64,000 nucleotides of DNA from Vitrella brassicaformis CCMP3155 (Eukaryota > Protista > Chromerida). Positions 8,250 through 64,000 of this stretch are shown one piece after another. The stretch lies in NCBI GenBank assembly GCA_001179505.1, contig CDMY01000117.1, forward strand, positions 1-64,000, written 5' to 3'. A program made the position numbers and the translations under genes. The stretch's first letter is position 1, and every line of letters starts with the position of its first letter. Under the pieces are notes generated by a model. The model was not told the DNA's origin. It worked only from the letters and a program-made list of their open reading frames with translations, and ran no database searches.

Positions 8250-9800
8250 AAACATCTCTCCGGATATAAAATGTAGGCAACGATGTGGCGTCTCCCGCCA
8301 CAGCCACCCATCCACCATCATGAAGCCCCACCTCCAGCACCAACAATGCCCGGGCTGGTTTTGGATGTCAGGACAAGAACACGTCTGCAACTCGAGAATG
8401 GAAGCTACAGTGCTCTCCCTCAATCAATGGCACCGAAGCGCCCGACAACTTATGCTCCCCTCAGACACGCACATACACTAGGTCCGCCTCTATCTCACCC
8501 ACCCTCAACCAAACAAACAACACCCCCCTCTCGTCTCCCCCAACCACAGCCACCCTTGCACCGTCATGAAGCCATGCAGCCTTGCAAGCCCCTCCGGCAC
8601 ATACAACCATTTGCCCCGCACCCATTCCCCTCCCGGCTGGAACTGCGTCTCACACTCCTGCAGCAGTCCGCCCCGCAACTCGATGATGAATGTCGCATCG
8701 GTCCACTCGACCTTGCCGACACACTGGGGCGGTAGTGTGACGCATGGTGAAGTGCGCAGAGTGTGGAGTGTGTGGGGCAGCGATGGGAGGGGGAGGGACG
8801 TCGTCGGTGTCTCTTCGGAACAGCTGCTGGGTCCCTTGTCCTCTCGCGACGCCTTGGCCTTCCTGCTGGTCGCCGTGGCGACCGACTGCTGACACCGGCA
8901 GGTTGCGTCATCGGGTACACAGACTGGTTCTTCATCCGGTGATCAACAAGCCTCTTCGCGTCCTGCACGTTACGCCACGTCACGGCTGGGGTGCGTGATG
9001 GGGTACGATGTGATGCATGTGCTCTTGTCGAAGGATAATGGCAGCTCCTGTGGAGACAAAGAGACGACACCAGTCAATGAGATGCGGTGCTATTGACCCC
9101 GATGGAGGGCTCACCTGGAGTCGCTGCTGGAGTGGGCCGATGATGTCTTCGGTTTTCTTGATGTACTTGAGAGTCTCCTGTTTTCTCGTGGGAATGATTT
9201 CCCATCCGTCGTTTGATATTGTGTGCTGAGGGATAGAGGGAGACACGAGCGGCTGCAACAAAGTGAATGAGAAGAGAATGGTATCGACATACCTGGCCGA
9301 CCCACCCATCCGCCCGTGATTGACGTGGCGCACTGAGGGGTGCCAACACGACAAATACAGCTGAAAAGGAGCCAACACACCGCACAACAAACACAATGTC
9401 AGACGTCTCAGTGCCTGCCTGTGAAGCTGTCTTCCCATGCCTGCCCGTGAGCGTTACGGGTCGCCATTTCCTCACATTCCCATGGTGAGCTCCTCGCGTG
9501 TCATGTCGGGGGCGGGGAGCGGGGTGGGCCATGCTGTCGCATCCTGCCACATACGCACAGAAATACACATAGCGATGCAATCAGCATACCACTCGACATC
9601 AACCTTCCACCGTACGTGTCGGTCGGTCCCCGTATTCTTATCTTGCGCGGCTGAGTGTTCAAAAAGCATAGTGATGCTTATCTCATGTTTGTTTAGTCAA
9701 ACTTGCTCACCGTGGCTCTTGGTTTGCGGCTGTTTTGGCTTCATTTGTGCGTTTCCCCTCGCACCTTAGCTGCATCCCTATGTGTCGCCGAGTCCACACA
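8250..9800 (-). pseudogene. Degenerate exon fragments downstream of the kinase-like pseudogene, including two diverged copies of a GFMxVxGWLW-containing segment
   Basis: Exon-like pieces with GT-AG ends, for example HTISNDGWEIIPTRKQETLKYIKKTEDIIGPLQQRLQ (about 9115-9225) and CVGKVEWTDATFIIELRGGLLQECETQFQPGGEWVRGKWLYVPEGLARLHGFMTVQGWLW (about 8545-8725). A decayed repeat reads ILELQTCS...GFMMVDGWLWRE (about 8295-8405). No continuous reading frame could be built. Confidence 0.45.
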
Positions 9801-9885
9801 TTCTCCACACAGGCAGAGGTGTGCGGGAGAAGGAGGAAGCCAAGATACGGACAGATATAAAATGTAGGCAACAATGCCGCGTCTC

Positions 9886-11328
9886 TCACCGCCTCCCTCC
9901 CTTTCTTGTCAGGGCGTCGAAGAGCTGGCCCTCGAATGTGCAGATTGCGTCCATGATGCCGGCAAGGGGCGGGCGATCACAGGGGAGGGAAGAGAGGCAC
10001 TCGACGGCCAGCTCCTCGATGTCCTTGAAGATGGGGCGGAAGCAGGCCAGCTCGGGGTCGTCTCTCTTGTGCAGGGGCGTGTGGCCTCCCGGCAGGCTGA
10101 TGAAGGAGCCGTCCTCCGCCCTCATCGCCGCCAGCCGCTCAGCCCATCTCAGCGCCCATTTGATGTCTCGCCGGAAGGCGCTCTTCGAAAGGCGCGCCGC
10201 TGAAAGGCTGCTGGCCGCTGGGTCCTCTTGCTCGTCAGCGGCTGCCTCCTGCTGGTCGATGTGTTTGGACAGCTCCTCGTAGCTGTTCCCCGCCACAATG
10301 TTGAGCAGCACGAGCCCCACACCAAACGCAGCCGCCCCCTCGCCCACACGCAGGTACTCCCTGCCGTCGCCGCCGACGTACACGAGCCCCTTCTGCTCCA
10401 GCTGCTGCTTGTAGGCCTCGTAAGCCTGGCGGATCTCGGCAGCCTTGGGGTCGGTGGAGGGGATGCCGAAGCTTTTGTCCCACTTGGCCGACCCTCCTCG
10501 AGACAGGAGCCGAGAAAGAAGGCCAGCTCCGGCGGGGTGGCGAAAGGGGTGTGCTGCGGCTCTTGGCCCCGGGCCTCCCTCTCCTTCTCGTTGAGCACCA
10601 CATGTGCGTCATGGCCATGTTGCCGGCGCTCCTCGTCGCTCTCGGGGCCGCCCTGGGTGTTAGCGATGTCGATGGTGATGACGCATTCATCGAGCGATGG
10701 TTACGTGTATACCCACCTGCGAAGCTCACATCGATCTTGTTGTCATAGCTGCCGCGCTGTTGGCAGTCCTCCCACCTCACTCGATAATCGTCGGCCATCT
10801 TGCCAATCAGGTTAGTAAAGGAGTGGCTCCAACTGTCTTCCACATGCGCCGCAATTGGGGTGAGGGAGGAGCGGCAGGTGGTGCTGGTGCTGCTGTGCGA
10901 CGGACGAGGAGGGGGGAACACCAAGCTGAATGTGGCCGCCTCAGGGCTTCCCAGTTGAGCAACACGTCCTTATTGAGGTTGTCGATGGCGTAGGTGTGGG
11001 CCGACGCGCAGGACATGTGTCCGAGCGTGAAGAGCCCTGCGCTGCGGACGGCCATCGACACCTCGTAGATGGCGTCGGCGGCCTGTTGTCAGGGAAGTTG
11101 TACACGTCGCAATGCGTGCCGCCCTCCCGCGGCACACCAACTGTGGACAAAACACACAGAGAGGACAAATTCCACCACGAATAGGGCCTTCTTCTTATGA
11201 TTCTTTCTGCACACTTACTCTTCAGCCACGGCATGGCAATGAAGGTACACTGCTTTTCAAACTGCACCTCCTCGCCCCTCATCTTCCTGAAGACGGCCGG
11301 CGCTCCGAGGCCCATGACGGTGGCGCAG
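9886..11328 (-). pseudogene. Divergent protein-kinase-fold pseudogene with at least 3 frameshifts
   Basis: Kinase subdomains appear in the correct order across frames: hinge FIAMPWL, helix-E/catalytic loop LIGKMADDYRVRWEDCQQRGSYDNKIDV (DxK), DFG-like VITIDIA, APE-like TPFATPPEL, subdomain IX AAAFGVGLVLLNIVAG and subdomain XI ELAVECLSSLPCDRP. There is a 4-nt deletion at about 10940 relative to the copy at 27635. Confidence 0.7.
10903..11328 (-). repeat. Repeat B (kinase N-lobe/helix exons plus intron), inverted copy of 27240..27670
   Basis: ORFs 10941..11342(-) and 27067..27735(+) are near-identical, from CATVMGLGAPAVFRKMRGEEVQFEK through PTPTPSTTSIRTCC. The shared boundary is ctgcgccaccgtcatggg. 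Confidence 0.95.
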
Positions 11329-11803
11329 CAGGTCCATTGCATATCAAGCAGCGATCTTAAGAGACATCATGATATAAAGTGGAGGCACCGATGGCTGGTG
11401 TGCCTGCCTGTCCACCGGCCAAACCAAAGTCGTCGACGTAGTCAGTGTCATCTGCATCAACGAGACACGCCAAACGACAGGAGCCACGTGTATCCTCTCG
11501 TCTGTAGCAGAGACACACGTACCCATGCGGTGGGTGGGGTGCCTCCTCACAGCCAGTCGCAGCTACCAAGAAGCAGGCCGTCTGGTCCGCTGCCAGTGGA
11601 CTTCCACCATCCCGCCTCCCCTTCCACCCCTCTTGCTCTCTTGCCCCATTCACCATACTGTCGGGGGTGCTGAGGAGGGAGATGGTGAATGCGTGTGAGT
11701 GCAGATGAGTGGCATACTCCCTTCCTGTCTTGTGTGGGCACCCCACCTCGATCCCACAGATCTTGGCGAGTCCCACGAGGTGGCCACATCGGTCCTCGGG
11801 GTC

Positions 11804-11918
11804 GCCTCGTCGGTCGTTGAGCTGCTGGGGCTGCGATGGCAAGCCGTCCGCTCTCCCACCGCACTCACATCCCCAGCAGTCGCCAAGACGTTGGTCGACC
11901 CGCTCACCTGAAGGCGCA
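11804..11918 (-). repeat. Repeat C, inverted copy of 28221..28335
   Basis: tgcgccttcaggtgagcgggtcgaccaacgtc...tcaacgaccgacgaggc is shared. Looser similarity continues to 11759 and 28361. Confidence 0.9.
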
Positions 11919-12049
11919 CAGCAAACACCTTACGCGTATTGCAACAGTGCCATGAATGTTTGTGCATTCATTCACTGGCTGTGTTAACCGTGCAGAGGGG
12001 GCTGCTGGCTGGTCTTTGTGCCAGGAAGGGCAGCTCAGCTTCCTCCGAC

Positions 12050-13950
12050 GGCATACGACTAGACAGCAAGTCGGGGTGGGGAGGTGGGGGGGGAGGTGGG
12101 GTGGGTGTTGGCCTATGTGTGGGGCTGACTGACCTCGAGTTTGATGTTGTATATGCTCTGATAGTACTCGCCCACCTTGCACTCTCGGCTGTTTTTGTCA
12201 CGGATTTTCGGTGGCGCGAGTGTTGAAGGGGCTTCTGCTCCTCCACCTGCAGACAGACAGATGTGGACATACAGACATTTGGGGAAACATTGCATTCCTC
12301 TGATACATGCTGGCTCCGTTGCACAGGCTCCGTTGTTCGTGTGTGTGTGTGTTGGTTCTTACGTCGTCGTAATGTGATATCGGACGTAGAGCATGGCCTC
12401 GTGTTTGAACACATTGAGCGTCTCCTTCATCTTGTAGTGGTCCAGAAAGGACGCCAGCAGGTCGCACACAAGCAAACCTGACACACACACGGAGACACAC
12501 ACACATAGGTCCTCTGTCTGTCTGTCTGTCTGTCTCTCTGTGTGTGGGGTTGCCTGTCTGACCATGTGCCGACTCTTTGAGCCGTTTGATGCCCTCATCC
12601 AGCTCCTCTGCCCGCTCGTCGTCGACAGTCGGCGGAATGCGACTCATCATCTGAAAGACTTGATACCGGCCCTCAAGTCTGGAGGAGGAGCTGACGGTGG
12701 GCCTCAGGAAGCCCTCGCTGCCCGTCACCCAACGCAGACGACGGAGACGGTCTGGAGCGACGGGCTGGGGCGCCGGGGCTAGGCCGCTGCGGACAGCCGC
12801 TCTCGCCTCCGCTCTCGCCTGACAGTGGTACGGTTCGCCCCTCACTCGCCCAGCTGCCAATGGGCTCCCCCCCACGGCAGCGGCGGCCGAAAGCTGCATG
12901 GGCGCAACAGGGGCTGCGGGGTCGTGGAGAGGGGCTGACTTGATCGGGAACTGTCGCTGCCGAATCTCACGGGCGGGGCGGGGACCTGAAGGGTGAGTGT
13001 GGGTGGTTGGTCTGCCCTCTGAGGCCTCCCACGATCCGTTCTGCAACCGCCCCTCGAGTGTGTAGTTGATGATGTCCAGCAGCAGGGGGCCGTCCGTGGG
13101 TGCCGACGAGACTGGGGGCGGGAGGGGCAGGGACCCGCACAGCTGCTCCTTGGACAGCACGATGTAGCGACGGGACACTATCTCCTCCGGCAAGCGGCCC
13201 TGATTGACCACATGGGAGGGGGGAGGTGTTCGTGTGTGTGTGTGTGTGTGTGTGTGGGTCCTTACGTCGTCGTATTGCTCGTGTTTGAAAACATTTAGCG
13301 TCTCCTTTATTCCGTAGTAGTCCAAAAGCGATGCCACTAGGTCGCACACAAGCGAACCTGACACACACAGGAAGACACACACACATAGGTCCCCTGTCTG
13401 TCTGTCTGTCTGTGGGGTTGCCTGTCTGACCATGCGGCGAGTCTTTGAGCCGCTTGATGCCCTCCACGAGCTCATCTGCCCGCTCGTCGTGGGCAGTCGG
13501 CGGCCTACCACTCATGAGCTGAAACACTTGACTCTTCAACTCCGCCTGTGCACACAGCAATCAGCCCGACACACACATACACACACAGAGCAATGAATGA
13601 ATCCCAACCCCACAAAGCAGCTCACCTTGATCCTCGGCAGGATGCCCTGCTGCACCATGGCCCCTATCACATGCTCCTTCAACACCGCCACCTTCTCCCG
13701 ACCAGCAGGCCCCCCGTAGTACCTCCCCTCTCGTGGCGCTCTTCGTCCCCCAGCACCCTGCTCTTCAGCCCGGGCTCCCGGGCGATGGTCGACGGGCGCC
13801 TGTCGCGGCCCTCGTCGCGCAGAATGCGCTCGATGCGCGCTTCCTCCTCTGGGTCTTCATGAGGTTCGCCCCGCCAAGCTGCCAGTGGCCTCCCCCCGAC
13901 GGCAGCGGCGGCCGACAACTCGGGAGACGGACTGGGCGGTGAGAGCTGGG
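12050..13950 (-). pseudogene. FOP/CEP43 (FGFR1OP)-like N-terminal domain with LisH, one full and one partial copy, frameshifted
   Basis: Spliced exons give EKVAVLKEHVIGAMVQQGILPRIK|AELKSQVFQLM...|GSLVCDLVASLLDYYGIKETLNVFKHE|...GPLLLDII. This matches the FOP pattern as recalled (GVLNRIKAELRAAVF / LVASLVAEFLQFFNLDFTLAVFQPE / GPLLLEVI). A second AELR-QVF plus LisH copy lies at about 12360-12665. Frameshifts occur at about 13725 and through an insertion in the second LisH exon at about 12370-12395. Confidence 0.75.
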
Positions 13951-14096
13951 AAGCACCATCTGGTTCATCAGCACACCACAACACAGCCACAACACAGCCA
14001 CAACCAAACCTTCGTCAGTTGGCTGAGAGAAAGAGGGATGGGCCGTCTTTGACCAGTGCGCCGCGCTTTGTCGTCCGATAGAAACCCCAAACTTAC

Positions 14097-14776
14097 CCAT
14101 GGTGATCATTGCCGGCTTTCTTCGGCTCGATACTTGAATGGTGCCGTCCACTAGAAGGACGCTGTCCATCCTTTCAAACTGCACCCCCTTCTTGATGTCG
14201 TTTTCAACTGTGCCGAAAAGTGGCCGGTATACATGCGGCGCAAACAGGCGGACTCCATGGACACTTTGAGATGTAGTTGGTTGGAGGGCAAGTTCTTTTT
14301 CTTCCATGCGTCGCGGACGTAGACCTGGGGGTCCTGCACCATATATAGGGATGAAGTTGGCTGGACACCACCCAAAGAATGGTCCACAGCCAGGTTTTCG
14401 TTATCGGCTGCCGCGAAGAGCGTCTTGAAGCTTTTTTTCACCAATGCTTCACGAACGGTACCGCTATGCCGTCCCATTTTTTGTCCTCTTTTGCCGTGGG
14501 TAGCGTCATGAGGCCCTCTTTCACCTTCTTTACGACCTCAGGCGTCGTCTTATAGATAGGGTCGGCCTGCATCGTTGTCTGCAGCCAGCACGAACCATGT
14601 GCGTGTCTGTTCGGGGCGATGGTTGCTCGCGAACTTGTCGGATGGAGGCGGAAGCCGATCGTGGGCACTATCAGAGCAAGAACGTAACGTTCTGCAACAG
14701 TGAGGACGGCCTGAAACAACAAAACCACTTTATGATGTGTATGAGGCTGCACAACCACCTGTTTGCCCCTGACCAT
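14097..14776 (-). pseudogene. Older, frameshifted paralog of the kinase-family N-terminal exons, lower in GC
   Basis: VHGVRLFAPHVYRPLFGTVENDIKKGVQFERMD...MG|gtaag parallels VMGLGAPAVFRKMRGEEVQFEK...|gtaag of repeat B. Three overlapping ORFs are needed to cover it. Confidence 0.45.
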
Positions 14777-15281
14777 GCCTAACATGTCGGCCGTCACCAG
14801 TGGCAGCCGCCACTCGTCATCCTCCGCCAGATGTTTTAAGAGCGATGCTGCGGCGGAGGTCGGTGGGCTCGAGTGGGCTCTAGGCCATTCTGCGGCGGGC
14901 GAGCTGGTAGTAGGTGACGGTGCAATGAGTGAGGGGGAAGGAGAGCGGGCTGCAGGGAGCGGCAACAAAGGACGAACATCAAGAAATGACGCACGCTTAA
15001 GAAGTAATCTAAAATTAGGCGTCTCGCCGTCTCGTTACGTCGAGAATCTCAATTCTCGCCGCCACCTGGCGTCGCGGCATCGCTCCATACTGTCTGTCTG
15101 TCTGCCTGTACATGACCCATGCATCTAGCTATACACACAAGCGGACACATGTACGTTCACGTCAGCCAGCCAACCCCCCTACAAAAAGCTGGAGCGCTGT
15201 ACGTGCGTATCAAATGAATGTACATACGAAAAGGAAACCAACACATATATCGATCGCCAGTCACCCGACGCTCTTGCCCCG
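14777..15281 (-). repeat. Repeat A (about 500 bp), inverted copy of 26410..26912
   Basis: Near-identical from cggggcaagagcgtcgggtga to gacatgttaggc. The copies differ by a few substitutions, GACA copy number and a short indel near ctcgacgt. Confidence 0.95.
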
Positions 15282-17412: not shown

Positions 17413-17547
17413 CTCGAAAGACTGGAACGAAAGAGGTCAGCAAGGGGCGACGGGCTTGATGGCGTTGTCTGGGCTCTACCTTTCAGCTCGCAAGGCTCGC
17501 ATCGCTCCGCGCTGCCCTGCTCCCCGGCCGCCCCTTGTGTGTGAGAA

Positions 17548-23345: not shown

Positions 23346-23393
<48 letters not shown>

Positions 23394-26300: not shown

Positions 26301-26430
26301 GAGATGTGTGAGGGCCGATGTTCGGTCGCTGCCGCGGTCCCGGACCCCCCCGTTGCGTGAGAGGGAATCCGTGCCGATGCACATGGTGTCCAAGAGCCGC
26401 CTGGCGCCACGGGGCAAGAGCGTCGGGTGA
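17548..26430 (+). CDS. Giant multi-exon coiled-coil protein, on the order of 2,000 aa; possibly centrosomal or cytoskeletal
   Basis: About 20 GT-AG-bounded exons with continuous E/Q/R/L heptad-rich translation, for example ENDRLKKCNNGLQEELLSLRKIQ and ESLRALNGRQDEVIGALERRL. There is a central S/T/P-rich QT-motif region. The stop is at 26428-26430 (RGKSVG*). No family could be assigned. Confidence 0.75.
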
Positions 26431-26912
26431 CTGGCGATCGATATATGTGTTGGTTCCTTTTCGTATGTACATTCATTTGATACGCACGTACAGCGCTCCA
26501 GCTTTTTGTAGGGGGGTTGGCTGGCTGACGTGAACGTACATGTGTCCGCTTGTGTGTATAGCTAGATGCATGGGTCATGTACAGGCAGACAGACAGACAG
26601 ACAGACAGACATGGAGCGATGGCGCGACGCCAGATGGCGGCGAGAATTGAGATTCTCGACGTCGAGACGCCTAATTTTACATTACTTCTTAAGCGTGCGT
26701 CATTTCTTGATGTTCGTCCTTTGTTGCCGCTCCCTGCAGCCCGCTCTCCTTCCCCCTCACCCATTGCACCGTCACCTACTACCAGCTCACCCGCCGCAGA
26801 ATGGCCTAGAGCCCACTCGAGCCCACCGACCTCCGCCGCAGCATCGCTCTTAAAACATCTGGCGGAGGATGACGAGTGGCGGCTGCTACTGGTGACGGCC
26901 GACATGTTAGGC
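26410..26912 (+). repeat. Repeat A, second copy; overlaps the last codons and 3' flank of the coiled-coil gene
   Basis: Reverse complement of 14777..15281. Confidence 0.95.
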
Positions 26913-28870
26913 GACGGGATAGACTTCCGTCGTGTGCTCTCGTTCGTCAGGCGAACGCGCCAGTGAGAGAGATGTCAGCAGCGAGCAACACTGCATCAGC
27001 AGCGGCCTCAGAGCCACACGAGGGAGGCGGATCAGCCGCGGCTCCCACTGGTGACGGCGGACATGTTTGGCATGGCCCATCGCCCAAGTGGCCAAGCAGA
27101 GCGGCAACAGCTTTGTTTCAGGAGGGAGTTCGAGGGGAAGGAGGCCGCACTTCATTGAAGATGGTCGCCATCACGCGCAACAGCAAACGGCAGCATCAAG
27201 AAGGCCTGCCACACGCAGGTGCGGTCCCTGCAGGCCGAGCTGCGCCACCGTCATGGGCCTCGGAGCGCCGGCCGTCTTCAGGAAGATGAGGGGCGAGGAG
27301 GTGCAGTTTGAAAAGCAGTGTACCTTCATTGCCATGCCGTGGCTGAAGAGTAAGTGTGCAGAAAGAATCATGAGAAGAAGGCCTTATTCGTGGTGGAATT
27401 TGTCCTCTCTGTGTGTTTTGTCCACAGTTGGTGTGCCGCGGGAGGGCGGCACGCATTGCGACGTGTACAACTTCCCTGACAACAGGCCGCCGACGCCATC
27501 TACGAGGTGTCGATGGCCGTCCGCAGCGCAGGGCTCTTCACGCTCGGACACATGTCCTGCGCGTCGGCCCACACCTACGCCATCGACAACCTCAATAAGG
27601 ACGTGTTGCTCAGCTGGGAAGCCCTGCAAGAGGCGGCCACGTTCCGCTCGGTGTTCCCCCCTCCCCGTCCCTGAAGAGGTGGGTGGGTACATCTGCGCCT
27701 TGCCACGCCACACGCGTTTATTTGTCTTTGTCTAACAGCAGTTGCGGCACCTGAGCCACAGTCAGGTGCTGCAGCTCGTGAACCAACTCGACGAGAGCGG
27801 CCGCAACATGCTCATGCAGATACGGTGGCCCTGAGCCACAATCAGCTGCTGGAGCTCGTGAACCAGCTCAGCGAGGAAGGCCGCGAGATGCTCATGAACC
27901 GCATCTTAGAGGAAGGGTTGGGTGGTGAGGACCGACGCGAGCATGAGGAGCCTCACGCACACAGTCGGCGACACGGAGGTCAGAATGGAGGAATGCTGAC
28001 TGACGTCACAATGCGTCAACGAATTTTTCGCTGTCTGTTTCCGTCACATGTCTGTATGCAGCCGCCGACTCTCCCCACAGCGAGGCCGGCTGAGGCGGAC
28101 ACACCCGTCAGACGTGTCGAGCTCTCCATCGACACCGGACGACCAGGTACCTCAACCAACACATGGCACTCTCGTGCTGCCAATACATACGCTGCTCTAT
28201 GTGTGTCCGTGTATATATGGTGCGCCTTCAGGTGAGCGGGTCGACCAACGTCCTGGCCACTGCTGGGGATGTGAGCGCGGTGGGAGAGCGGACGGCTTAC
28301 CATCGCAGCCCCGGCAGCTCAACGACCGACGAGGCTGTGCCTTCGTGGGGATCGCCAAGATTTGGCCAGTGTATGGGCGGGCCCACAAGCCATCGCTGCC
28401 TCCATTTTATATCACGATGTCTCTTTGGCTCTTGTGCATGGCAACCGACCGACCTCTGTCTGTGTGTGTGTGAATGTGTGTGTGTTGCGTCTCCACTCTT
28501 GAGCAAAAAGCAAGACTCCGACTTCTTTGTGTATGCGTGTGTGTGAGCAAATCGATCAACCAACCAGCTGTACACGGGACGGATAAAGTGCATCCAAACG
28601 CAGTGGTCTGCAATACAGTGAGCCACGGCCATACACACACACACACACACGAAGCGTTTCAGTCCACACTAGCTGATCCACCTCCACAGACTCTCGATGC
28701 AGATCGCATCTCCAGAGGTCCACATCTCGTGCATGTCCGACAACAATCGCACCAATGTGGCCATCGATTCCACCGATGGCCAAAGGGATGCGATCGCTGA
28801 GGGACACGTCCGAAATGTAACCACCGAGGGGCGCTCCAACCAATACCAGCTGTCAGCTGCATAATACGGT
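26860..28870 (+). pseudogene. Chimeric pseudogene: kinase N-lobe fragments (repeat B), a tandem 27-aa helical repeat, repeat C and a possible terminal exon
   Basis: GEGGRTSLKMVAIT (Gly-loop/VAIK-like) is followed by repeat B, which stops at 27672 (FPPPRP*). Direct repeats LSHSQVLQLVNQLDESGRNMLMQI and LSHNQLLELVNQLSEEGREMLMNRI lie at about 27751 and 27831, 80 nt apart and so out of frame. Multiple stops are present. Confidence 0.6.
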
Positions 28871-53999: not shown

Positions 54000-54687
54000 A
54001 TGTCGAAGGCGGCGCAGACCAAGACAGCCGAGCTGCTGTCGCAGCGGCGGCTGCCTGGCTCCCCTCCGACGATATCATCCAGCGGTCGGGGCCTGATGGA
54101 CCTGCTCAGGGGCTGGCACGGCTGGTTCGGGCCAATCACCAACAACAACGCCCACACGCTCAACTTCTTCTTCGGCCTGGTCCAGGGCACGTTTGCCAAC
54201 ACGTTTGAGCTGCTCGGCGGACTGAGGTACGAGAAGCTGCCGCGGCAGCTGGTCGACTACGTCATCCGAGGGGGCGTCCTTTGCCGCTCCATGTGGGTGG
54301 TCTTCCCGCCACTCATCCTCTACAAGTTCATCAGAGGGGTAAGGAAGGCATGACAGCACAGCTGGCCATGCAGACAGACAGACAGACAGACAGACACACC
54401 CACACACGCACACGCGACGACGGACACGCAGGATGGGATATATGCGATCAACACGGCGTGTGTTGTGTTGTGTTATGTGTGTGCAGACGGACCGTGCGAT
54501 GTGGTCAGTGGAGAGTTTCTACCTGGGGACGAGGGGCGGTGAGGCGCAGGCCTACTGGGACATGACGCGGCCTGGGTGGGGCGGCCACTGGAAGGCCCAG
54601 GCGGACCTCGAGCAAATCTACCGGACGTCACACGGGGTGACCGAGCCGCTCAAGCAGGAGGCCGCAGAGGAGGAGGACGACGAGTGA
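54000..54687 (+). CDS. Small (179 aa) W/G-rich protein with one hydrophobic segment, function unknown; join(54000..54338, 54487..54687)
   Basis: The phase-0 GT-AG intron is in frame and codon bias is strong. Hydrophobic segment: GGVLCRSMWVVFPPLILYKFI. Confidence 0.75.
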
Positions 54688-58087: not shown

Positions 58088-58118
<31 letters not shown>

Positions 58119-58533
58119 AAATGAGGGCCATAGACAATATGCGCGTCTATTTATCTGTCCATCGCTCTCTGCGCACCTGTATGTGTGTCTTGACGACTGA
58201 GAAGGGTTTCCTGGTGCTGTAGAGCACTGCATAGGAGGTGTAGGTCAGCGTGAAGAGCAGCAGCTGGCTGTGCCGGACGATGGCCCGGGGGTCAAAGGCC
58301 TTGACCGCTGCTGGCTGCTGTGGCTGCGGCTGACTGTTGCTGGTGGCCTCCTTTGCGGCACCCTCCTTGCCGCCCTCCATATCGTCACCGCCGTCAGTGG
58401 TCGGGAGGGCGGCAAATCCCCGCGGCGCCCGCTGCAGCACCAGGGAGAGGGGGTTCTGGGCCATCTCTTGCAGCCAGTTGAGGGAGGACTGGAGGGCAGA
58501 CGGCGGTTTGGTCATCTTTGGCGACTTCACCAT
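56277..58533 (-). CDS. MFS organophosphate:Pi antiporter family (SLC37/GlpT-like sugar-phosphate exchanger)
   Basis: TYTSYAVLYSTRKPFSVVK, LGTIDTAFLTAYALGQ, RGSVLGVWTT|SQQIG, FFVKLIRYTLLFWLP, FDIGGIGGAIFTGYLSD, GPDSVLG and AAGVVNGMGSSG are OPA-family motifs. There is a long central cytoplasmic loop. Confidence 0.9.
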
Positions 58534-58730
58534 TCAACCGAGAGACCACATTTAAGTTGCTAAGACTGGGAACCGAGCACGCAGAGGCACTCAATGCCCC
58601 TCTCTGCACAGAACAAACAACGCAGAGAAGCCAAAACCTCGTCGCACATTGGGTTTTGACTTGGTCCAGCAACTTCAAGCTCGCAATCGCCAGCGGCCTT
58701 CTTCCCCTCCCTTTCCGTCAAACACGTCGA

Positions 58731-60006
58731 ATGATGGAGCATGCTGAGGGTGAGCTCGACAACAATGCACTTACTGCCGAGGCAAGGAAGCTGCTCGAGG
58801 AACTGGCATCAACGACGCTCCCCGACGGCCGCCCCGGCAACGTGGGCATCTCGTGGGACAAGAGCCGCAACAAGATGGGCTACTGCGTGCGGCTCAAGTT
58901 CCTGCAGCAGAACATCATGGGCAAGGGCTGCCACAGACCCGCTGAGAGGTCCGTCGCTGGGCTAAGGCTGGCGCTCCAGAGTGCAAAGGATGTGCGCGAC
59001 AAGCTGGTGAGTGACTTGAGCGGTGCCCGGGCCGAGCTGAACGAGATGAACGCCATGCACCAGCAGATGCTTCTGGACCAAGTCAAGGAACGACCAGGTG
59101 AGGAGGAAGTCAAAACAGGGGGAGGGGACAAAACGACGTGCATTCAGCATCTACGGCTCTGTTTCTACCTTGTGTGTGCGGTTGCTGGCAGATGCCTTGA
59201 CGGATGCCCAAGTCCGCACAGCCGCCCAGCTTCTGATGAACCGACACCGCGCCAACACGCCTGCCACTCGTCCTGCCCTCAACAGTCGCGAGGACGGCGA
59301 GCGGCGGCTCAAGCAGGGCTGCGGAATCGCATGGCGCAACGACAAGCTGGCCTTCGAAGTGAAAATCTGGCGCGACGGCGGCTACCTCCCCAGGCGAGCC
59401 TTTGCGGTCAAGCGCAACACCGTCGCGGACCTAAGGGAGGCCTTTGCCATGGCCAAGGCGGCGGCTGAGCACATGATGGAGGAGCACATGGAGAGGGAGG
59501 TCGTCGTGCAGCCCACCCTCCTGCAGGCGGCCATGGGGCAGCAGCAGCAGGCTGTGCCAGCGATCGTGGACCACCCCCCACTTGCCATCACCGATGCCCA
59601 GCCCTCGCCCGCCGCCATCAAGGCCGTCAAGGACGAGAAGATTGACGGCTCATCTGACCCACAGGACGGCAGCGTGGCCCTCGACAAGTGCGCAGAGGCG
59701 GCGCGGAAGCGCCTGAGCGATCGGAGCGTGGGTGACTTCATGGTGGCGGAGCAATTGCGGTGGAACTGTGACTCTCGTGAGTACGAGGTGGTAGAGTGTG
59801 TGTACCGCAGGCACAACTGGCGTTCGACGCCCTTCTCCGCCAAGTGGGCCAGTGTGGGTGCGAGGGTGCCGGAGGGGGAGGGGGGGCTGATGCTGATGGA
59901 GGGAGTGGTGGATGAGGCCCTGAACAAGGCTGCCAAGGCCGTGCTGCTGAGAGCGCTGAGGCGGAGGAATAAAGACAGGGCCAAGCGGAAGGACAAGGCA
60001 GTGTAG
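58731..60006 (+). CDS. ApiAP2-like protein with two clear and one possible degenerate AP2 domains; join(58731..59097, 59192..60006)
   Basis: VGISWDKSRNKMGYCVRL...LRLALQSAKDVRD and CGIAWRNDKLAFEVKIWRDG...RRAFAVKRNTVADLREAFAMA fit the three-strand-plus-helix AP2 layout. A third candidate is QLRWNCDSREYEVV...PFSAKW...VVDEALNKAAKAVL. Confidence 0.65.
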
Positions 60007-60107
60007 GTGGGGGGATGGACTAGGCCGAAGCTGCCTGATAGCTAATGTCACTGGTATTTCATTATACACTATGTGTTTGTTGGGGGGGGGGGGGGGGGGG
60101 GGGGGGG

Positions 60108-60407
60108 NNNNNNNNNNNNNNNNNNNNNNNNNNNNNNNNNNNNNNNNNNNNNNNNNNNNNNNNNNNNNNNNNNNNNNNNNNNNNNNNNNNNNNNNNNNNN
60201 NNNNNNNNNNNNNNNNNNNNNNNNNNNNNNNNNNNNNNNNNNNNNNNNNNNNNNNNNNNNNNNNNNNNNNNNNNNNNNNNNNNNNNNNNNNNNNNNNNNN
60301 NNNNNNNNNNNNNNNNNNNNNNNNNNNNNNNNNNNNNNNNNNNNNNNNNNNNNNNNNNNNNNNNNNNNNNNNNNNNNNNNNNNNNNNNNNNNNNNNNNNN
60401 NNNNNNN
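60108..60407. other. Assembly gap of 300 N, preceded by a 26-nt G homopolymer (60082-60107)
   Basis: Read directly from the sequence. Confidence 0.98.
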
Positions 60408-60677
60408 GTGGTCTGTGGTGTCCCCCGGCAAACGGGCGTTTTTTCCTATGGGTGACTGACATTTGTCGTGGCCTGTGAGGACGATTGGGGTGGCGTTCAT
60501 GTAGTTAGTCATCCCATGGATGTATGTGTGAATGCATTCAATCAGTCAATCAAATCCATTGCTGTCTGTCATGCTATCAGAGCACTAGAAGCAAAACCAT
60601 CAAATCCCTCCCAAATCCGACTAATCGTTCCGCCCGCTAAATCAAAAGCCCTCACCACAAACCACAGTCATGACCTC

Positions 60678-63600
60678 TCAGCCGCGGTGGACTTCCTTCA
60701 GTCTTGAGCTGACGGTTGACCTCAGGAAGCCCTCGCTGCCCGTCACCTCGCGGACACGACGAGGACGCGCTGGAGCGACGGGCTGGGGCGCCTGGGGTCT
60801 GCCGCTGCGGACAGGCGCTCTCCTGTCCGCTCTCGCCTCACAGTGACGCGGTTCGCCCCTCACCCGCCCAGCTGCCAATGGGCTCCCCCCCACGGCAGCG
60901 GCGGGCGACAGCTGCATGGGCAACAGGGGCTGCTGGTGGGTCAAGGAGAGGCGCTGACTTGATTGGGGACTGTTGCTGCCGAATGCCACGGCGGGGCGGG
61001 GACCTGAAGGCTGAGTGTGGGTTGGTGGTCTGCCCTCTGAGGCCTCGGGCGGCTCCTCCACCTGCAGACAGACAGATGTGGACACACAGACATGGGGGGG
61101 AAACATTACATACCTCTGATACATACCCGTCCCGTTCTTCTCTACCTGTTGTGGTGGTGGTGCCTGTGTTTGCTGCCTCTGCCTCTGCCGTCGTTGGTCT
61201 CGCTTTCTGATGATGTCTTGGCGGTCGATGGTGTCGAGCTGTGTCTGGAGGATCTCGCGGCGGGGCTCGTCGGGCAGATCCGTCAGCGACTGGAAGTCCA
61301 CACCGGCGCACGACAGAAGAAACCTCTCCGATACCTCCGGCGATCGAGCAATGGCGCTGAGCAGGTCAGAATAGAAGGGCAGGGGCTCGTCCAGGTGGGC
61401 ATCCTCCTCACCCTCTCCCCCAGCCGGACTCTCCTCGGCAGCTTCCTGACTCTCGGCGGGGCGCTGTGACTGCTCGTCTCCCTGCTGTGGTGCTTCTTGT
61501 GGCGGCTGGTCGCGCTGCTCTGACGCCGGTGGCGGCGGCTGAGATGCAGGCGCTGCTGGTGCTGGTACTGGTGCTGGTCGTGGGTGCGGTGCCGTCACGT
61601 CGGGTGGCCCAAAGGTGGAGGCACCGCAGGAGCGTCCTGTTGGGCCTGGGCTTCGCCCGTTGACCTCCCTGTCTGGCCGTCAGCAGTGGGGTTGTGCTGT
61701 CGCACCCGGGCCAACGCCTGTTGGACAAAGTTGAGGTCCAGCCGCACGTGCGGGGAAGGGGCTGACTGCACCGAAGGGGCTGCCAACTGCACCAAAGGGG
61801 CTGCCGACTGCACCGCCGGGGCGGGCGGGGGAGGGGCTGCCGACTGCATCGACCGTGTGAGAGAACATACGAGGCCGTCGATGGACATGCTCATCTCAGG
61901 CTGCTCAGCACCAGCACCGGCACCACCAGCAGCAGCAGCTGCCGCTGCAGCGGGAGCTTGGGGTTGCTTCGATGCGGCAGCAGTGGGCTGCGGCTGAGCA
62001 CCAGGGTGCTCCTGTTGTTGCTGCTCTTGCGGGAGTTCCGGTGGCTCGCCGACCTCTGCCCGCTCGTTGTCGACTGTCGGCGGAATGCGACCCATCATCT
62101 GAAAGACTTGAAACCGCAGCTCCGCCTGTGCACACAGCAATCAGCCCGACACACACATACACACACAGAGCAGTGAATGAATTCCAACCCCACAAAGCAG
62201 CTCACCTTGATCCTCGGCAGGATGCCCCGCTGCATGGCCCGTATCACGTGCTCCTTCAACACCGCCACCTTCTCCCGACCAGCAGGCCCCCCGTAGTACC
62301 TCAGCGCCCTCTCGTGGCGCTCTTCGTCACCCATCACCCTGCTCTTCAGCCCGTGCTCCCGGGCGATGGTCGACGAGCGCCTGTCGCAGCCCTCGTCGCG
62401 CAGAAAACGCTCGATGCGCGCCTCCTCCTCAGCTGACCCGTCCGCGCCATCGTCATCGCCCTCCTGGCCGCCGCTGTCGTCATCCTCCCTGTCCATGCCT
62501 GAGGATGGCCCGGCGGCACCCTCAGGCTGCGTGAGGCTCAGAATCACGTCCATGTCCAAAGGCGGCAGACGAGTGTGACGCGGGTGGGGGAAATCTGATC
62601 CACACACACACACACACACACAATCGAGATGGCTGCGTGGCCATGCGTGTGGCTCGTTGCGTACCATTGACATCTCTGGCTCCCATAGATCCCACTACAG
62701 TGCTCTCCTCAATGCCCTGCCCGCCCCCAGCCGCAGCCGCTGGAGCGATCTCGCGCATGTTGCCCGCGATGGTGTCGTTAAACGACGCACTCAGCTCCAG
62801 CTCCAGGCTATCGCCCACATGATCCGCGCAAGCCAGCTCGCTCAGCCGTATGTCCCTCTTCGGCAGCGAGTTCGATGGCGGCACTGGTGAGAGAACGGGC
62901 CGGTTGTCGTCCGAGTGCTGCAGTGGGGAGGGCAGCTGCGAATTGGTCATGGCCGCTGGCTGGCCCAAAGGTGGAGGCACCGCAGGAGCGTCCTGTTGGG
63001 CCTGGGCTTCGCCCGTTGACCTCCCTGTCTGGCCGTCAGCAGTGGGGTTGTGCTGTCGCACCCGGGCCAACGCCTGTTGGACAAAGTTGAGGTCCAGCCG
63101 CACGTGCGGGGAAGGGGCTGACTGCACCGAAGGGGCTGCCAACTGCACCAAAGGGGCTGCCGACTGCACCGCCGGGGCGGGCGGGGGAGGGGCTGCCGAC
63201 TGCATCGACCGTGTGGGAGAACATACGAGGCCGTCGATGGACATGCTCATCTCAGGCTGCTCAGCACCAGCACCGGCACCACCAGCAGCAGCAGCTGCCG
63301 CTGCAGCGGGAGCTTGGGGTTGCTTCGATGCGGCAGCAGTGGGCTGCGGCTGAGCACCAGGGTGCTCCTGTTGTTGCTGCTCTTGCGGGAGTTCCGGTGG
63401 CTCGCCGACCTCTGCCCGCTCGTTGTCGACTGTCGGCGGAATGCGACTCATCATCTGAAAGACTTGAAACCGCAGCTCCGCCTGTGCACACAGCAATCAG
63501 CCCGACACACACATACACACACAGAGCAGTGAATGAATCCCAACCCCACAAAGCAGCTCACCTTGATCCTCGGCAGGATGCCCCGCTGCACCATCGCCCC

Positions 63601-64000
63601 TATCAGATTCTCCTTTAACAGGGCCACCTTCTCCCGACCAGCGACGGCCGCTTGAGGGTCAGGCTCCTCCATATCCCACATTTCCCAACACAACTCGGTA
63701 ACCAGGTACTGACACACATGTCAAATGGATTCATGCATTGGTGTCAGTCAGAGAGTGAGAGTGAAGTGACTGACTTACATTCCATATTTCGTTGGCAACG
63801 GCATCTTTCAGTGCGGTGGCCTCGATGTCGCGATACTCGTACCACACGTCCTTGTCTGACACACGGAAGGAGGATACACCAACAGAGAGACAGAGACAGC
63901 GGAGCCATGGTGTGTGTGTTGTGGATTGGATGGGTGCATGGTCGATATGACTGACTTACAGTCGCTGGTCTGATCCTCTCTGAACGGCCGCATCTCCAGG
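60678..64000 (-). CDS. Chimeric gene beginning beyond the window: DUF4378-like helix, two FOP N-terminal fragments without LisH, and an out-of-frame UBM plus Pro-rich tail (partly pseudogenised)
   Basis: Exons >64000..63960, 63855..63779 and 63708..63562 splice in phase to LEMRPFREDQTSDYKDVWYEYRDIEATALKDAVANEIWNYLVTELCWEMWDMEEP...EKVALLKENLIGAMVQRGILPRIK|AELRFQVF. The second unit stops at 61595. The UBM-containing ORF 60678..61598 is in another frame. Confidence 0.6.
61605..63642. repeat. Recent direct duplication of about 680 bp (61605..62283 and 62961..63642)
   Basis: The copies are near-identical from tggcccaaaggtggaggcacc to tctcccgaccagc, including the intron. Their translations (ORFs 61595..62140 and 62522..63496) differ at only a few residues. 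Confidence 0.95.

What the first reader, a model, noticed from the sequence alone, without database searches (positions are those of the whole stretch)
8250..64000. Exon-shuffling family: kinase, FOP/LisH, UBM and DUF4378 modules recombined in different orders at three loci
Seen in the sequence, reading the sense strand. Locus 1 (15281->8250) runs A, kinase-N paralog, FOP+LisH x2, C, B, kinase C-lobe. Locus 2 (26410->28870) runs A, B, helical repeat, C. Locus 3 (64000->60678) runs DUF4378-like, FOP-N x2, UBM, Pro-rich. B and C swap order between loci 1 and 2. The Pro-rich segment (13020->12660 vs 61045->60700) and the VEE acceptor (about 12240-12310 vs 61055-61125) swap order between loci 1 and 3. 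The intron at about 12240-12360 shares only its 3' half with the intron at about 61065-61150, and the upstream exons differ (LisH vs UBM), which is a chimeric intron. Inference: a birth-and-death hotspot, possibly a gene-capturing mobile element, is building new proteins from centrosomal and ubiquitin-pathway parts.
Basis: partly seen in the sequence, partly recalled or inferred. Interest (0 to 1): 0.8.

Follow-up and report, generated by a model that had tools for sequence, protein, structure and literature searches.

The report
Mosaic of partial gene duplicates in Vitrella
Three nearby stretches of a Vitrella brassicaformis scaffold really do share pieces in different orders. They look like ordinary tandem and segmental DNA duplications of a species-specific FOP/LisH-like gene and of orphan DNA, partly decayed, and not like exon shuffling by a gene-capturing mobile element.

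Summary
The window is Vitrella brassicaformis CCMP3155 scaffold CDMY01000117.1, positions 1-64000. The B/C swap, the Pro/VEE swap and the half-shared intron are also real.

Of the four domain names, only FOP/LisH holds up, and only below Pfam's own cut-off. Kinase, UBM and DUF4378 get no Pfam or PDB support.

The shared pieces are genomic DNA that still carries introns. About 13 of 16 breakpoints lie inside exons or open reading frames. One FOP-N exon has a 4-bp frameshift. Block A and the supposed kinase-N region show no coding signal. No terminal inverted repeats and no transposon proteins were found.

The swapped orders fit different windows on tandem arrays. The locus 1 unit (Pro, exon 2', LisH', VEE) begins and ends exactly where VEE and Pro abut in locus 3.

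An intact-looking paralogue lies on another scaffold. One further block (M) also sits in poly(A)-polymerase-like genes on two more scaffolds and evolves neutrally (dN/dS about 1).

This short-read assembly has proven duplication artefacts at its gaps, so the long-range order around A, B and the locus 3 tandem repeat needs long reads.

Verdict: an ordinary duplication-and-decay mosaic, of low to moderate interest.

The parts
14777..15281 (-). Block A, locus 1 copy. It is non-coding-like DNA between the 456-aa gene and model P0001.
   Evidence: 94.7% identical to 26410-26912, inverted. The copies differ by 9- and 10-nt indels and a (CAGA)n length change. It has stops in nearly every frame and no codon periodicity.
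13961..14776 (-).
   Evidence: GC at the three codon positions is 0.53/0.52/0.54, with 5-11 stops in every frame. No Pfam hit. No similarity elsewhere in the window.
13047..13860 (-). FOP-like copy a. FOP-N exon 13849-13626, exon 2 13545-13429, LisH exon 13355-13266, following exon 13199-13047. The introns are retained.
   Evidence: 80% DNA identity to L001 1022-1890, the P0002 gene. dN/dS against P0002 is 0.10-0.29.
13724..13727 (-). 4-bp deletion (frameshift) inside the FOP-N exon of copy a.
   Evidence: In alignment A1, copy a lacks 4 nt that are present in the P0002 gene and in locus 3 copy b. Model P0001 gets round it with an extra intron, 13702-13650.
12688..13028 (-). Pro-rich block, locus 1 copy. 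It links copy a to copy b. Part of it resembles the region upstream of FOP-N in copy a.
   Evidence: 87.2% identical to 60706-61046. 12832-12890 matches 13863-13915 at 83%.
12339..12668 (-). FOP-like copy b, truncated. Exon 2' (12665-12561) is cut at its 5' end. LisH' exon is 12475-12362. There is no FOP-N exon.
   Evidence: 77.8% identical to copy a and 80% to the P0002 gene. Its exon 2 is 94-95% identical to the locus 3 exon 2. Pfam FOP_dimer scores 26.7 bits on this copy.
12237..12308 (-). VEE block, locus 1 copy: the 3' part of the intron after LisH' plus 10 nt of exon.
   Evidence: 91.8% identical to 61052-61124. Sequence read.
11359..11919 (-). Block C-D, locus 1 copy (C 11804-11919, D 11359-11423). 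The roughly 380 nt between C and D are missing from locus 2.
   Evidence: C is 95.7% and D 84.6% identical to locus 2. The shared part of C starts 12 nt upstream of a splice acceptor.
10902..11329 (-). Block B, locus 1 copy. It forms the C-terminal exons of model P0001.
   Evidence: 97.5% identical to 27239-27670. The longest exact runs are 228 and 133 nt. Its coding frame is unclear.
9886..10798 (-). It is not repeated elsewhere.
   Evidence: Gene coordinates. GC3 is 0.84, the clearest coding signal in the region. No Pfam or PDB match.
26410..26912 (+). Block A, locus 2 copy. It begins 20 nt before the annotated end (26430) of the 2338-aa coiled-coil gene.
27239..27670 (+). Block B, locus 2 copy, inside a 146-aa gene model (27253-27834).
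27867..28214 (+). An 80-nt tandem repeat at 27750-27896 overlaps its start.
   Evidence: 88.7% identical to scaffold positions 66066-65715, which lie in the 5' part of the locus 3 gene beyond the window. Homology runs up to the splice acceptor.
28220..28425 (+). Blocks C (28220-28335) and D (28361-28425), locus 2 copies, inside a 139-aa gene model (27943-28864).
60108..60407 (.). Assembly gap of 300 N, about 270 nt from the 3' end of locus 3.
60678..64000 (-). Locus 3: the 3' 3.3 kb of an annotated 1430-aa gene model. The model spans scaffold positions 60678-66306, so it extends past the window end.
   Evidence: No Pfam family is recorded for it.
60706..61124 (-). VEE (61052-61124) directly followed, 5 nt later, by Pro-rich (60706-61046).
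61125..61601 (-).
   Evidence: No Pfam hit at E up to 5. No other protein in 5.8 billion matched it.
61602..62283 (-). Second copy of the 1356-nt tandem unit: FOP-N 3' half, intron, truncated exon 2, Q/A-rich stretch.
   Evidence: 97.8% identical to 62958-63642. Nine of the 13 differences fall in the first 50 nt, and the rest is 99.4% identical.
62284..62430 (-). 5' half of the FOP-N exon of locus 3 copy b. It is joined mid-exon to the acidic tail of the preceding unit.
62459..62971 (-). Block M plus the acidic segment.
   Evidence: 88% identical to L001 2120-2617 (P0002), 82% to L003 10517-10774 (P0004) and 77% to L004 8410-8694 (P0005). dN/dS is 0.74-2.5.
62958..63642 (-). First copy of the tandem unit. 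Its left end is a breakpoint in the middle of the FOP-N exon.
63643..64000 (-).
   Evidence: No DUF4378 hit at E up to 5.

Best explanation
The three loci are a species-specific mosaic made by repeated DNA-level partial duplications. Some duplications were tandem with periods of about 0.9-1.4 kb, one was inverted over 11-16 kb, and some pieces were dispersed to other scaffolds. Deletions and further breaks followed.

One ingredient is a fast-evolving orphan gene family whose N-terminus resembles the FOP/TOF-LisH dimerisation module. Its most intact member is P0002 on scaffold CDMY01000853.1. The other ingredients (A, B, C-D, H, Pro, VEE, the Q-rich stretch, M) are orphan or non-coding DNA.

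The swapped orders are what different windows on a tandem array look like. They do not need blocks to have been moved one at a time.

The copies are not maintained as a set of working domains. Some are truncated mid-exon, one is frameshifted, and M drifts neutrally. The chimeric 'proteins' on record (P0001 of 658 aa, the 146- and 139-aa models, the 1430-aa model) are gene-predictor paths threaded through the fragments.

Shown here: the repeats, their boundaries, the retained introns, the frameshift, the dN/dS values, the absence of transposon hallmarks and the paralogues elsewhere. Inferred: the tandem-array origin of the permutations and the lack of function.
For: 1. The window is Vitrella scaffold CDMY01000117.1. 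Locus L002 is 100% identical to window 941-24169, and L005 matches window 48731-64000 exactly.

2. The shared blocks include introns. Examples are the FOP-N-to-exon-2 intron, which is almost identical between locus 1 copy a and locus 3, the (CAGA)n intron inside M in three scaffolds, and the intron at the end of H. The copying was therefore of genomic DNA, not cDNA.

3. Breakpoints are abrupt and mostly mid-exon. These include FOP-N left, exon 2 to Q-rich, the left end of the first tandem copy, both ends of Pro, the right end of C, the left end of B, and position 61602. Only VEE-left, C-left and H-right lie in or at introns.

4. The locus 1 segment 13028->12237 (Pro, exon 2', LisH', intron, VEE) starts and ends at the exact point where VEE and Pro abut, 5 nt apart, in locus 3. 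That is one full period of a tandem unit. Locus 3 is itself a 1356-nt tandem repeat. The unrelated loci L003 and L004 show the same kind of short-period partial duplication.

5. Signs of decay:
- a 4-bp deletion in the FOP-N exon of copy a;
- copy b lacks FOP-N;
- both locus 3 copies have exon 2 cut and lack LisH;
- block A and the 13961-14776 spacer have no coding periodicity;
- GC3 is 0.72 for P0001, against 0.80-0.82 for the transcript-confirmed neighbours P0008, P0009 and P0012.

6. Selection. The parent P0002 against the window copies gives dN/dS 0.10-0.47, which reflects past constraint on the FOP/LisH part. Window copies against each other give 0.43-0.77 on 3-19 substitutions per comparison, which cannot be told from neutral. 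Block M gives 0.74-2.5, the same as its out-of-frame controls.

7. There is no family outside Vitrella. An exhaustive HMMER search of 1.84 billion representatives with P0002 found 7 proteins. Four are annotated Vitrella proteins. Two (an MMETSP transcript ORF and an unnamed ENA contig ORF) are near-identical to the P0002 tail. One is a 106-aa FOP/LisH-like metagenome protein at E 1e-4. Composite searches with all other blocks returned only P0001 and P0002.

8. No transposon hallmarks were found.

9. For the blocks linking locus 1 and locus 3, and for C, the longest exact run is 54 nt or less. That is below the assembler's k of 75, so repeat-induced mis-joins cannot explain those arrangements (assembly method from PMC4501334).
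Against: - Long open reading frames run across several junctions. Examples are the 324-aa ORF 63496-62522 through exon 2, Q-rich and M, and the 192-aa ORF through the acidic segment into FOP-N. Random breaks would not always stay in frame, although long spurious ORFs are common at 60% GC.
- Three breakpoints sit within 2-12 nt of splice sites. That is more than a purely random scatter might give.
- Block B has clear 3-nt periodicity in GC content, so it derives from, or still is, coding sequence.
- Expression could not be tested for the window loci. The negative evidence is weak, because it rests on exact-protein look-ups only.
- The tandem-array history is a parsimony argument, not a reconstruction. 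The B versus C-D permutation needs extra breaks under any model.
- The frameshift could be a base-calling or polishing error in a short-read assembly.
Confidence: 0.6

Rival explanations
1. Assembly artefact. The diverged copies exist in the genome, but their order and copy number on this scaffold were produced by the short-read pipeline (Velvet k=75, SSPACE, GapFiller, IMAGE, REAPR), which can swap flanks at long exact repeats or duplicate sequence at gaps.
For: - The same assembly has proven artefacts in this family. L001 1834-2938 equals 3239-4343 at 100% across a 300-N gap. That creates the internal 'repeat' of P0002.
- L001 6135-6816 matches 7117-7798 at 99.6% across another gap. L003 8563-8901 equals 9464-9802, and 9202-9464 equals 10641-10903, both at 100% around a gap.
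- Blocks A, B and the locus 3 tandem unit contain exact runs of 147, 228 and 255 nt, all longer than k=75.
- Locus 3 ends about 270 nt from a 300-N gap.
- The B copies are inverted repeats. A flank swap at B would equal an inversion of the 16 kb between them and would turn the 'B/C swap' into a plain C-D-B-H-C-D tandem array.
Against: - The window copies differ by 2-22%, unlike the 99.6-100% identical gap artefacts.
- Every local junction must be spanned by real 75-mers from reads.
- For FOP-N, Pro, VEE, exon 2 and C the longest exact run is 54 nt or less, so the locus 1 versus locus 3 permutation and the half-shared intron cannot come from graph mis-joins.
- The assembly was checked with mate pairs using REAPR (PMC4501334).
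Confidence: 0.17
2. Productive module shuffling. The loci are working, recently assembled chimeric genes, and Vitrella recombines exon-sized pieces, including M, between FOP-like and poly(A)-polymerase-like genes to make new proteins.
For: - M, with its intron, occurs in four different gene contexts on four scaffolds.
- H links locus 2 and locus 3.
- Several junctions stay in frame.
- Three breakpoints are at splice sites.
- The FOP/LisH exons show past purifying selection.
- A transcript ORF (P0003) shows that at least the tail-only paralogue on L001 is expressed.
Against: - M has dN/dS of about 1.
- Most breaks are mid-exon.
- Copy a is frameshifted.
- The locus 3 copies lack LisH, and copy b lacks FOP-N, so the dimerisation module is incomplete in three of four window copies.
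- No domain other than FOP_dimer is detectable.
- Logan transcript contigs reproduce neighbours P0008 and P0012 exactly, but none reproduces P0001, P0002, P0004 or P0005.
Confidence: 0.13
3. Gene capture by a mobile element (Pack-MULE-, Helitron- or similar). The blocks travel as cargo of a transposon.
For: - Blocks are dispersed to at least four scaffolds.
- A 23-nt motif, CATCGNTGCCTNCAYTTTATATC, recurs only in these mosaic loci: four times in the window and three times in L003 (two of those lie in the gap-flanking duplicates), within about 126 kb of Vitrella DNA examined. It could be a remnant of an element end.
Against: - No terminal inverted repeats flank any block or group of blocks; only (CA)n pairs were found.
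- No common termini: each block pair has its own boundaries.
- The motif's flanks are unrelated, and in L003 it lies inside predicted exons.
- The annotated genes within about 10 kb of the three loci have no transposase, reverse transcriptase or Rep/helicase family among their precomputed Pfam hits.
- Only 2-4 copies of any block were seen.
- Vitrella's transposable element content is low.
Confidence: 0.05

Closest known systems
FOP / FOR20 / OFD1-type TOF-LisH N-terminal dimerisation module (Pfam PF09398 FOP_dimer; PDB 2D68, human FGFR1OP)
   Same: A profile of the Vitrella copies plus P0007 hits PDB 2D68 (FOP) at E 6.4e-6, and the next hit is at E 1.1. Pfam FOP_dimer matches P0001 at E 6.8e-6. 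The upstream helix (LKEHV..AM.Q.GILPRIKAELR) aligns with the same region of the FOP/LisH-like protein P0007.
   Different: All scores are below Pfam's gathering cut-off (26.7 and 12.6 bits against 29.4). The rest of P0002 has no homologue outside Vitrella. Nothing shows a centrosomal role. Three of the four window copies carry only part of the module.
Lineage-specific tandem and segmental duplication with pseudogenisation (birth-and-death gene families; circular permutation by duplication followed by deletion)
   Same: Intron-containing DNA copies at 78-98% identity. Short-period tandem units. An inverted duplicate 11-16 kb away. Truncated and frameshifted copies. Permuted orders that are cyclic shifts of one another.
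   Different: The density of breakpoints is high: at least 16 in about 12 kb. The pieces are small (70-500 nt). One piece, M, sits in an unrelated gene family on other scaffolds.
Exon shuffling by intronic recombination
   Same: Three junctions (VEE-left, C-left, H-right) lie in introns or at splice sites, and one intron is a hybrid of two sources.
   Different: Most junctions are inside exons. There is no evidence of phase-compatible, domain-sized exons, and the pieces are not recognisable domains.
Gene-fragment capture by Pack-MULEs or Helitrons
   Same: Fragments of several genes lie side by side and are annotated as chimeric genes.
   Different: There are no terminal inverted repeats, no target-site duplications, no shared termini and no autonomous element nearby. 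Copy numbers are 2-4.

Membership tests
FOP/TOF-LisH (PF09398 FOP_dimer) | Score at or above Pfam's gathering cut-off (29.4 bits) | tested here: not met
   P0001 scores 26.7 bits (E 6.8e-6) on copy b. P0002 scores 12.6 bits (E 0.17). The spliced copy-a piece gave no hit.
FOP/TOF-LisH (PF09398 FOP_dimer) | Significant sequence similarity to a solved FOP dimerisation domain that includes the LisH helices | tested here: met
   Profile A7 against PDB: 2D68 (FOP) at E 6.4e-6 and 29.1 bits, covering profile positions 60-99. The next hit is at E 1.1. The single sequence alone gave only E 1.1.
FOP/TOF-LisH (PF09398 FOP_dimer) | Dimerisation and centrosome or basal-body localisation | not testable with these tools
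   This needs experiments.
Protein kinase (Pkinase / PK_Tyr_Ser-Thr) | Detectable kinase catalytic domain, N-lobe or C-lobe | tested here: not met
   No kinase family at E up to 1 in three whole frames of locus 1 or in the separate ORF pieces. No kinase chain in PDB at E up to 10. The 'N-lobe' region is non-coding-like.
UBM (PF14377) | Match to the UBM repeat profile | tested here: not met
   No hit at E up to 5 for 61125-61601, translated alone or within the 333-aa ORF.
DUF4378 (PF14309) | Match to the DUF4378 profile | tested here: not met
   No hit at E up to 5 for the 63734-63955 piece or for the upstream exons of the locus 3 gene.
Exon shuffling | Recombination breakpoints lie in introns, so that whole exons are exchanged | tested here: not met
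   About 13 of 16 breakpoints are inside exons or ORFs, and 3 are in or at introns.
Gene-capturing DNA transposon (Pack-MULE, Helitron) | Terminal inverted repeats or conserved termini bounding the captured block | tested here: not met
   Only microsatellite-derived inverted pairs were found. Block boundaries differ for every pair. Helitron-type ends (5' TC, 3' hairpin plus CTRR) were not specifically scanned.
Gene-capturing DNA transposon (Pack-MULE, Helitron) | Many genomic copies and an autonomous partner | not testable with these tools
   No Vitrella genome is searchable by DNA here. Only about 126 kb could be fetched. The annotated genes within about 10 kb of the three loci have no transposon-type Pfam family on record.
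Processed (retro-copied) pseudogenes | Loss of introns in the copies | tested here: not met
   Introns are retained and homologous between copies.
Tandem/segmental duplication mosaic | Intron-containing direct or inverted DNA repeats with abrupt ends; head-to-tail units | tested here: met
   The locus 1 unit 13028->12237 is one full period relative to the VEE|Pro junction of locus 3.

The most novel reading that the evidence does not exclude
Vitrella may have an active DNA-level process that copies intron-containing pieces of 0.1-0.5 kb between unrelated genes on different scaffolds. Candidate mechanisms are template switching during replication or re-insertion of small circular DNA, which would explain units that begin and end at the same phase. 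The genes involved are FOP-like and poly(A)-polymerase/TUTase-like. On this reading some products, such as the 1430-aa locus 3 gene, are expressed new proteins, and the recurring 23-nt motif CATCGNTGCCTNCAYTTTATATC marks the process.
Probability: 0.08. Interest if true: 0.6.

Novelty: new member of a known kind. Interest (0 to 1): 0.25.

Why it matters
If the main reading is right, the value is practical. Several Vitrella gene models are predictor artefacts threaded through duplicated fragments or across assembly gaps, and they should not be used as evidence of novel domain architectures. This applies to P0001, annotated 'LisH domain-containing protein', to the 1430-aa model, and to P0002 with its gap-spanning false repeat.

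The locus also gives a well-mapped small example of how tandem partial duplication produces permuted block orders in a chromerid, a group where genome dynamics are little studied.

Only the minority reading, an active piece-copying process that yields expressed chimeras, would interest specialists in gene origination.

Tried and rejected
Frames with X in place of stops were used instead.
- Two composite protein searches with all blocks returned only P0001 and P0002. Absence there is therefore weak evidence.
- tblastx of the window against L001, L003 and L004 produced mostly low-complexity noise and no new block. A 15-mer scan gave the same result.
- I tried to rebuild the 229-aa protein by enumerating introns. 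This gave 3201 possible models, and a spliced sequence is not accepted for look-up.
- Look-ups of two contiguous junction-spanning ORFs in public assemblies found nothing. This is uninformative because the start codons called there are unknown.
- Telomere repeat search: none. Rfam and tRNA scans of the window: none.
- A literature search for a long-read Vitrella assembly or for reports on these genes found nothing relevant.
- The idea that the 23-nt motif is a general Vitrella 3'-end signal was rejected. It occurs only in the mosaic loci among roughly 50 genes' worth of sequence.
- The idea that VEE is an 'introner' was rejected, because the shared block includes exon sequence and is contiguous with Pro in locus 3.
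- That 15281 is both the end of block A and the length of scaffold CDMY01000853.1 is a coincidence. The two places share no sequence.

Full report
**Source and assembly**

A protein search with translated pieces of locus 1 returned two proteins of Vitrella brassicaformis CCMP3155. The contig that encodes one of them, P0001, is scaffold CDMY01000117.1 (188,681 bp). Its positions 941-24169 are 100% identical to the window, and a second fetch matched window 48731-64000 exactly. The window is therefore positions 1-64000 of that scaffold.

The assembly is short-read only: Velvet with k=75, then SSPACE, GapFiller, IMAGE, ICORN and REAPR (PMC4501334). The window has 60% G+C and one 300-N gap at 60108-60407.

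**Checking the observation**

- A: 14777-15281 vs 26912-26410 (94.7%).
- B: 10902-11329 vs 27670-27239 (97.5%).
- C: 11804-11919 vs 28335-28220 (95.7%).
- FOP-N with its intron and the start of exon 2: 13475-13849 vs 62055-62430 (90.2%) and vs 63411-63642 (89.7%).
- Pro-rich: 12688-13028 vs 60706-61046 (87.2%).
- VEE: 12237-12308 vs 61052-61124 (91.8%).
- Second, partial FOP-like copy in locus 1: 12339-12663 vs 13242-13531 (77.8%).
- 1356-nt tandem unit in locus 3: 61602-62283 vs 62958-63642 (97.8%).

I add block D (11359-11423 vs 28425-28361, 84.6%). It shows that C and D form one block, with about 330-380 nt deleted in locus 2.

The order swaps and the half-shared intron are real.

**The domain names**

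Pfam finds nothing at E up to 1 in the three sense frames of locus 1. It also finds no kinase, UBM, DUF4378 or LisH family in 18 separate ORF or spliced pieces from the three loci.

The 'kinase C-lobe' belongs to a separate annotated 229-aa gene (10798..9886). That gene has a strong coding signature (GC3 0.84). It matches no kinase among all PDB sequences, even at E = 10.

The 'kinase-N paralog' (13961-14776) has stops in every frame, no codon periodicity and no relative in the window.

FOP/LisH is the exception:
- Pfam FOP_dimer scores 26.7 bits (E 6.8e-6) on P0001, just under the 29.4-bit cut-off.
- The only non-Vitrella relative found for P0002 is P0007, a 106-aa FOP/LisH-like protein (E 1e-4).
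- A profile of the copies hits the solved FOP dimerisation domain 2D68 at E 6.4e-6, with nothing else below E = 1.

**Annotation on these loci**

- Locus 1 is split into P0001 (658 aa, 14169..10941), the 229-aa gene and a 121-aa gene.
- Locus 2 carries two small models of 146 and 139 aa. Block A of locus 2 begins 20 nt before the end of a 2338-aa coiled-coil gene.
- Locus 3 is a 1430-aa model from 66306 to 60678, so it runs 2.3 kb past the window.

In the part beyond the window I found block H. Scaffold positions 66066-65715 match window 27867-28214 at 88.7%. All three loci are therefore pairwise linked.

**Relatives elsewhere**

P0002 (891 aa, scaffold CDMY01000853.1, locus L001) has the complete arrangement: FOP-N, exon 2, LisH, a following exon, block M, an acidic segment and a tail. 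It is 80-88% identical in DNA to the corresponding parts of locus 1 and locus 3.

An exhaustive HMMER search of 1.84 billion representative proteins with P0002 found only seven proteins. Two of them, P0004 and P0005, are poly(A)-polymerase/TUTase-like Vitrella genes on scaffolds 359 and 494. They share only block M, together with its internal (CAGA)n intron.

This is a small, species-specific network of shared pieces. It is not a widespread family.

**How the copies were made**

The copies keep their introns, so genomic DNA was copied, not cDNA.

The boundaries are abrupt. By my count about 13 of 16 fall inside exons or ORFs. Examples:
- Locus 3 joins the acidic segment to the middle of the FOP-N exon.
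- Locus 3 cuts exon 2 after ...NERAE and continues into a Q/A-rich stretch.
- Copy b of locus 1 starts in the middle of exon 2.

Three boundaries are in or at introns: VEE-left, C-left 12 nt before an acceptor, and H-right at an acceptor.

The locus 3 unit is itself a hybrid. Its FOP-N exon and intron resemble locus 1 copy a, and its exon 2 resembles copy b.

**The permuted orders**

In locus 3, VEE is followed after 5 nt by Pro. In locus 1, the segment 13028->12237 begins with the first base of Pro and ends with the last base of VEE. It is exactly one period of a unit [Pro, (FOP-N), exon 2', LisH', intron-VEE].

Part of Pro resembles the region upstream of FOP-N in copy a. Locus 1 can therefore be read as two tandem FOP-like copies, the second having lost FOP-N.

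Locus 3 is a tandem repeat, and L003 and L004 show the same kind of short-period partial duplication.

C-D-B in locus 1 and B-H-C-D in locus 2 are cyclic shifts of each other. I infer that the swapped orders are different windows on tandem arrays, trimmed by later deletions. This is a parsimony argument.

**Signs of decay or function**

- Copy a has a 4-bp deletion in the FOP-N exon relative to both P0002 and locus 3. P0001 avoids it with an extra intron that removes the core of the helix.
- dN/dS between P0002 and the window copies is 0.10-0.47, which reflects past constraint on FOP/LisH.
- dN/dS between window copies is 0.43-0.77 on very few changes.
- Block M gives 0.74-2.5 among its four contexts, no different from out-of-frame controls.
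- GC3 is 0.71-0.76 for the mosaic models and 0.80-0.82 for neighbours whose exact proteins are reproduced by transcript-assembly contigs.
- No such contig reproduces P0001, P0002, P0004 or P0005. This is weak evidence, because the look-up needs an exact product.
- An MMETSP transcript ORF (P0003) maps to a tail-only paralogue on L001, so part of the family is transcribed.

**The mobile-element idea**

The only inverted repeats around the blocks are (CA)n microsatellites. Block ends are different for every pair. The precomputed Pfam hits of the annotated genes within about 10 kb of the three loci include no transposon-type family. Vitrella has few transposable elements.

One oddity remains. A 23-nt motif, CATCGNTGCCTNCAYTTTATATC, occurs four times in loci 1 and 2 and three times in L003, where two of the three lie in the gap-flanking duplicates. 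It occurs nowhere else in the roughly 126 kb of Vitrella DNA I could read, and its flanks are unrelated.

**The assembly caveat**

In L001 and L003, 100%-identical (in one case 99.6%) duplicates flank 300-N gaps. One of them creates the internal 'repeat' of P0002, whose model splices across the gap. The pipeline therefore did create false duplications in this family.

The window copies are 2-22% diverged, so they are separate genomic sequences. Blocks A, B and the locus 3 tandem unit contain exact runs of 147-255 nt, longer than k=75. Their long-range connections rest on read pairs only. A flank swap at the inverted B copies would be equivalent to inverting the 16 kb between them.

For FOP-N, Pro, VEE, exon 2 and C the longest exact run is 54 nt or less. 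The locus 1 versus locus 3 relationships are therefore safe from that artefact.

**Verdict**

The repeats and permutations are real. The names kinase, UBM and DUF4378 are not supported, and FOP/LisH is supported below Pfam's cut-off.

The best explanation is a species-specific mosaic of tandem, inverted and dispersed partial DNA duplications, now decaying and over-interpreted by gene prediction (confidence about 0.6). The rivals are assembly error for the A/B order and tandem copy number (about 0.17), productive shuffling (about 0.13) and transposon capture (about 0.05).

This is a new example of a known kind of genome dynamics. Interest is low to moderate.

Noticed in passing
window 8263-8285(-), 9854-9876(-), 11371-11393(-), 28391-28413(+); L003 8683-8705, 9584-9606, 12230-12252: A conserved 23-nt motif, CATCGNTGCCTNCAYTTTATATC, with unrelated flanks. 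It is found only in the mosaic loci among about 126 kb of Vitrella DNA read, against 0.17 matches expected by chance in the window. One copy lies 10 nt after the stop codon of the 229-aa gene, and in L003 it lies inside predicted exons. Its function is unknown.
   Followed up: partly
L001 1834-2938 = 3239-4343 (100%), 6135-6816 vs 7117-7798 (99.6%); L003 8563-8901 = 9464-9802 and 9202-9464 = 10641-10903 (100%): Identical or near-identical duplicates flank 300-N gaps. These are gap-closing artefacts of the assembly. The internal repeat of protein P0002 (residues about 247-499 and 500-752) is one of them, and the gene model splices across the gap.
   Followed up: yes
scaffold CDMY01000117.1 65715-66066 (L005 16985-17336), beyond the window: Block H of locus 2 (window 27867-28214) recurs at 88.7% in the 5' part of the 1430-aa locus 3 gene. 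The homology ends at a splice acceptor.
   Followed up: yes
window 62459-62971; L001 1883-2402; L003 10308-10774; L004 8186-8694: Block M, about 500 nt with an internal (CAGA)n intron, is shared between FOP-like genes and poly(A)-polymerase/TUTase-like genes (P0004, P0005) on other scaffolds. It evolves with dN/dS of about 1.
   Followed up: yes
L003 5-14 kb and L004 7.7-13.6 kb: The poly(A)-polymerase-like loci are themselves mosaics of partial duplicates in permuted order. For example, a nucleotidyltransferase fragment lies both before and after the M-containing exon in L004.
   Followed up: partly
window 233-255: Three degenerate telomere-like units (AACCCTA GGCCCTA AACCCTG) lie near the start of the scaffold. 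There is no true telomere array.
   Followed up: partly
window 9886-10798 (-): The 229-aa annotated gene has the strongest coding periodicity in the region (GC3 0.84) but no Pfam, PDB or other homologue. It is an orphan gene.
   Followed up: partly
window 48760-48783 and L001 406-429 (-): An exact 24-nt match (AGGGTGCTCCCTGAAACCGCTGCT) between otherwise unrelated regions of two scaffolds.
   Followed up: no
window 2348-2420 and 54783-54895: Imperfect palindromes: self inverted matches at 81% over 74 nt and 72% over 116 nt.
   Followed up: no
window 27750-27896: A short tandem duplication (67 nt at 83.6%, period 80) lies at the start of block H in locus 2.
   Followed up: no
window 63593-63622 vs 62234-62263: Nine of the 13 differences between the two locus 3 tandem copies fall in the first 50 nt, in the FOP-N 3' half. 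The remaining 630 nt are 99.4% identical. This looks like a conversion patch or a composite origin.
   Followed up: partly
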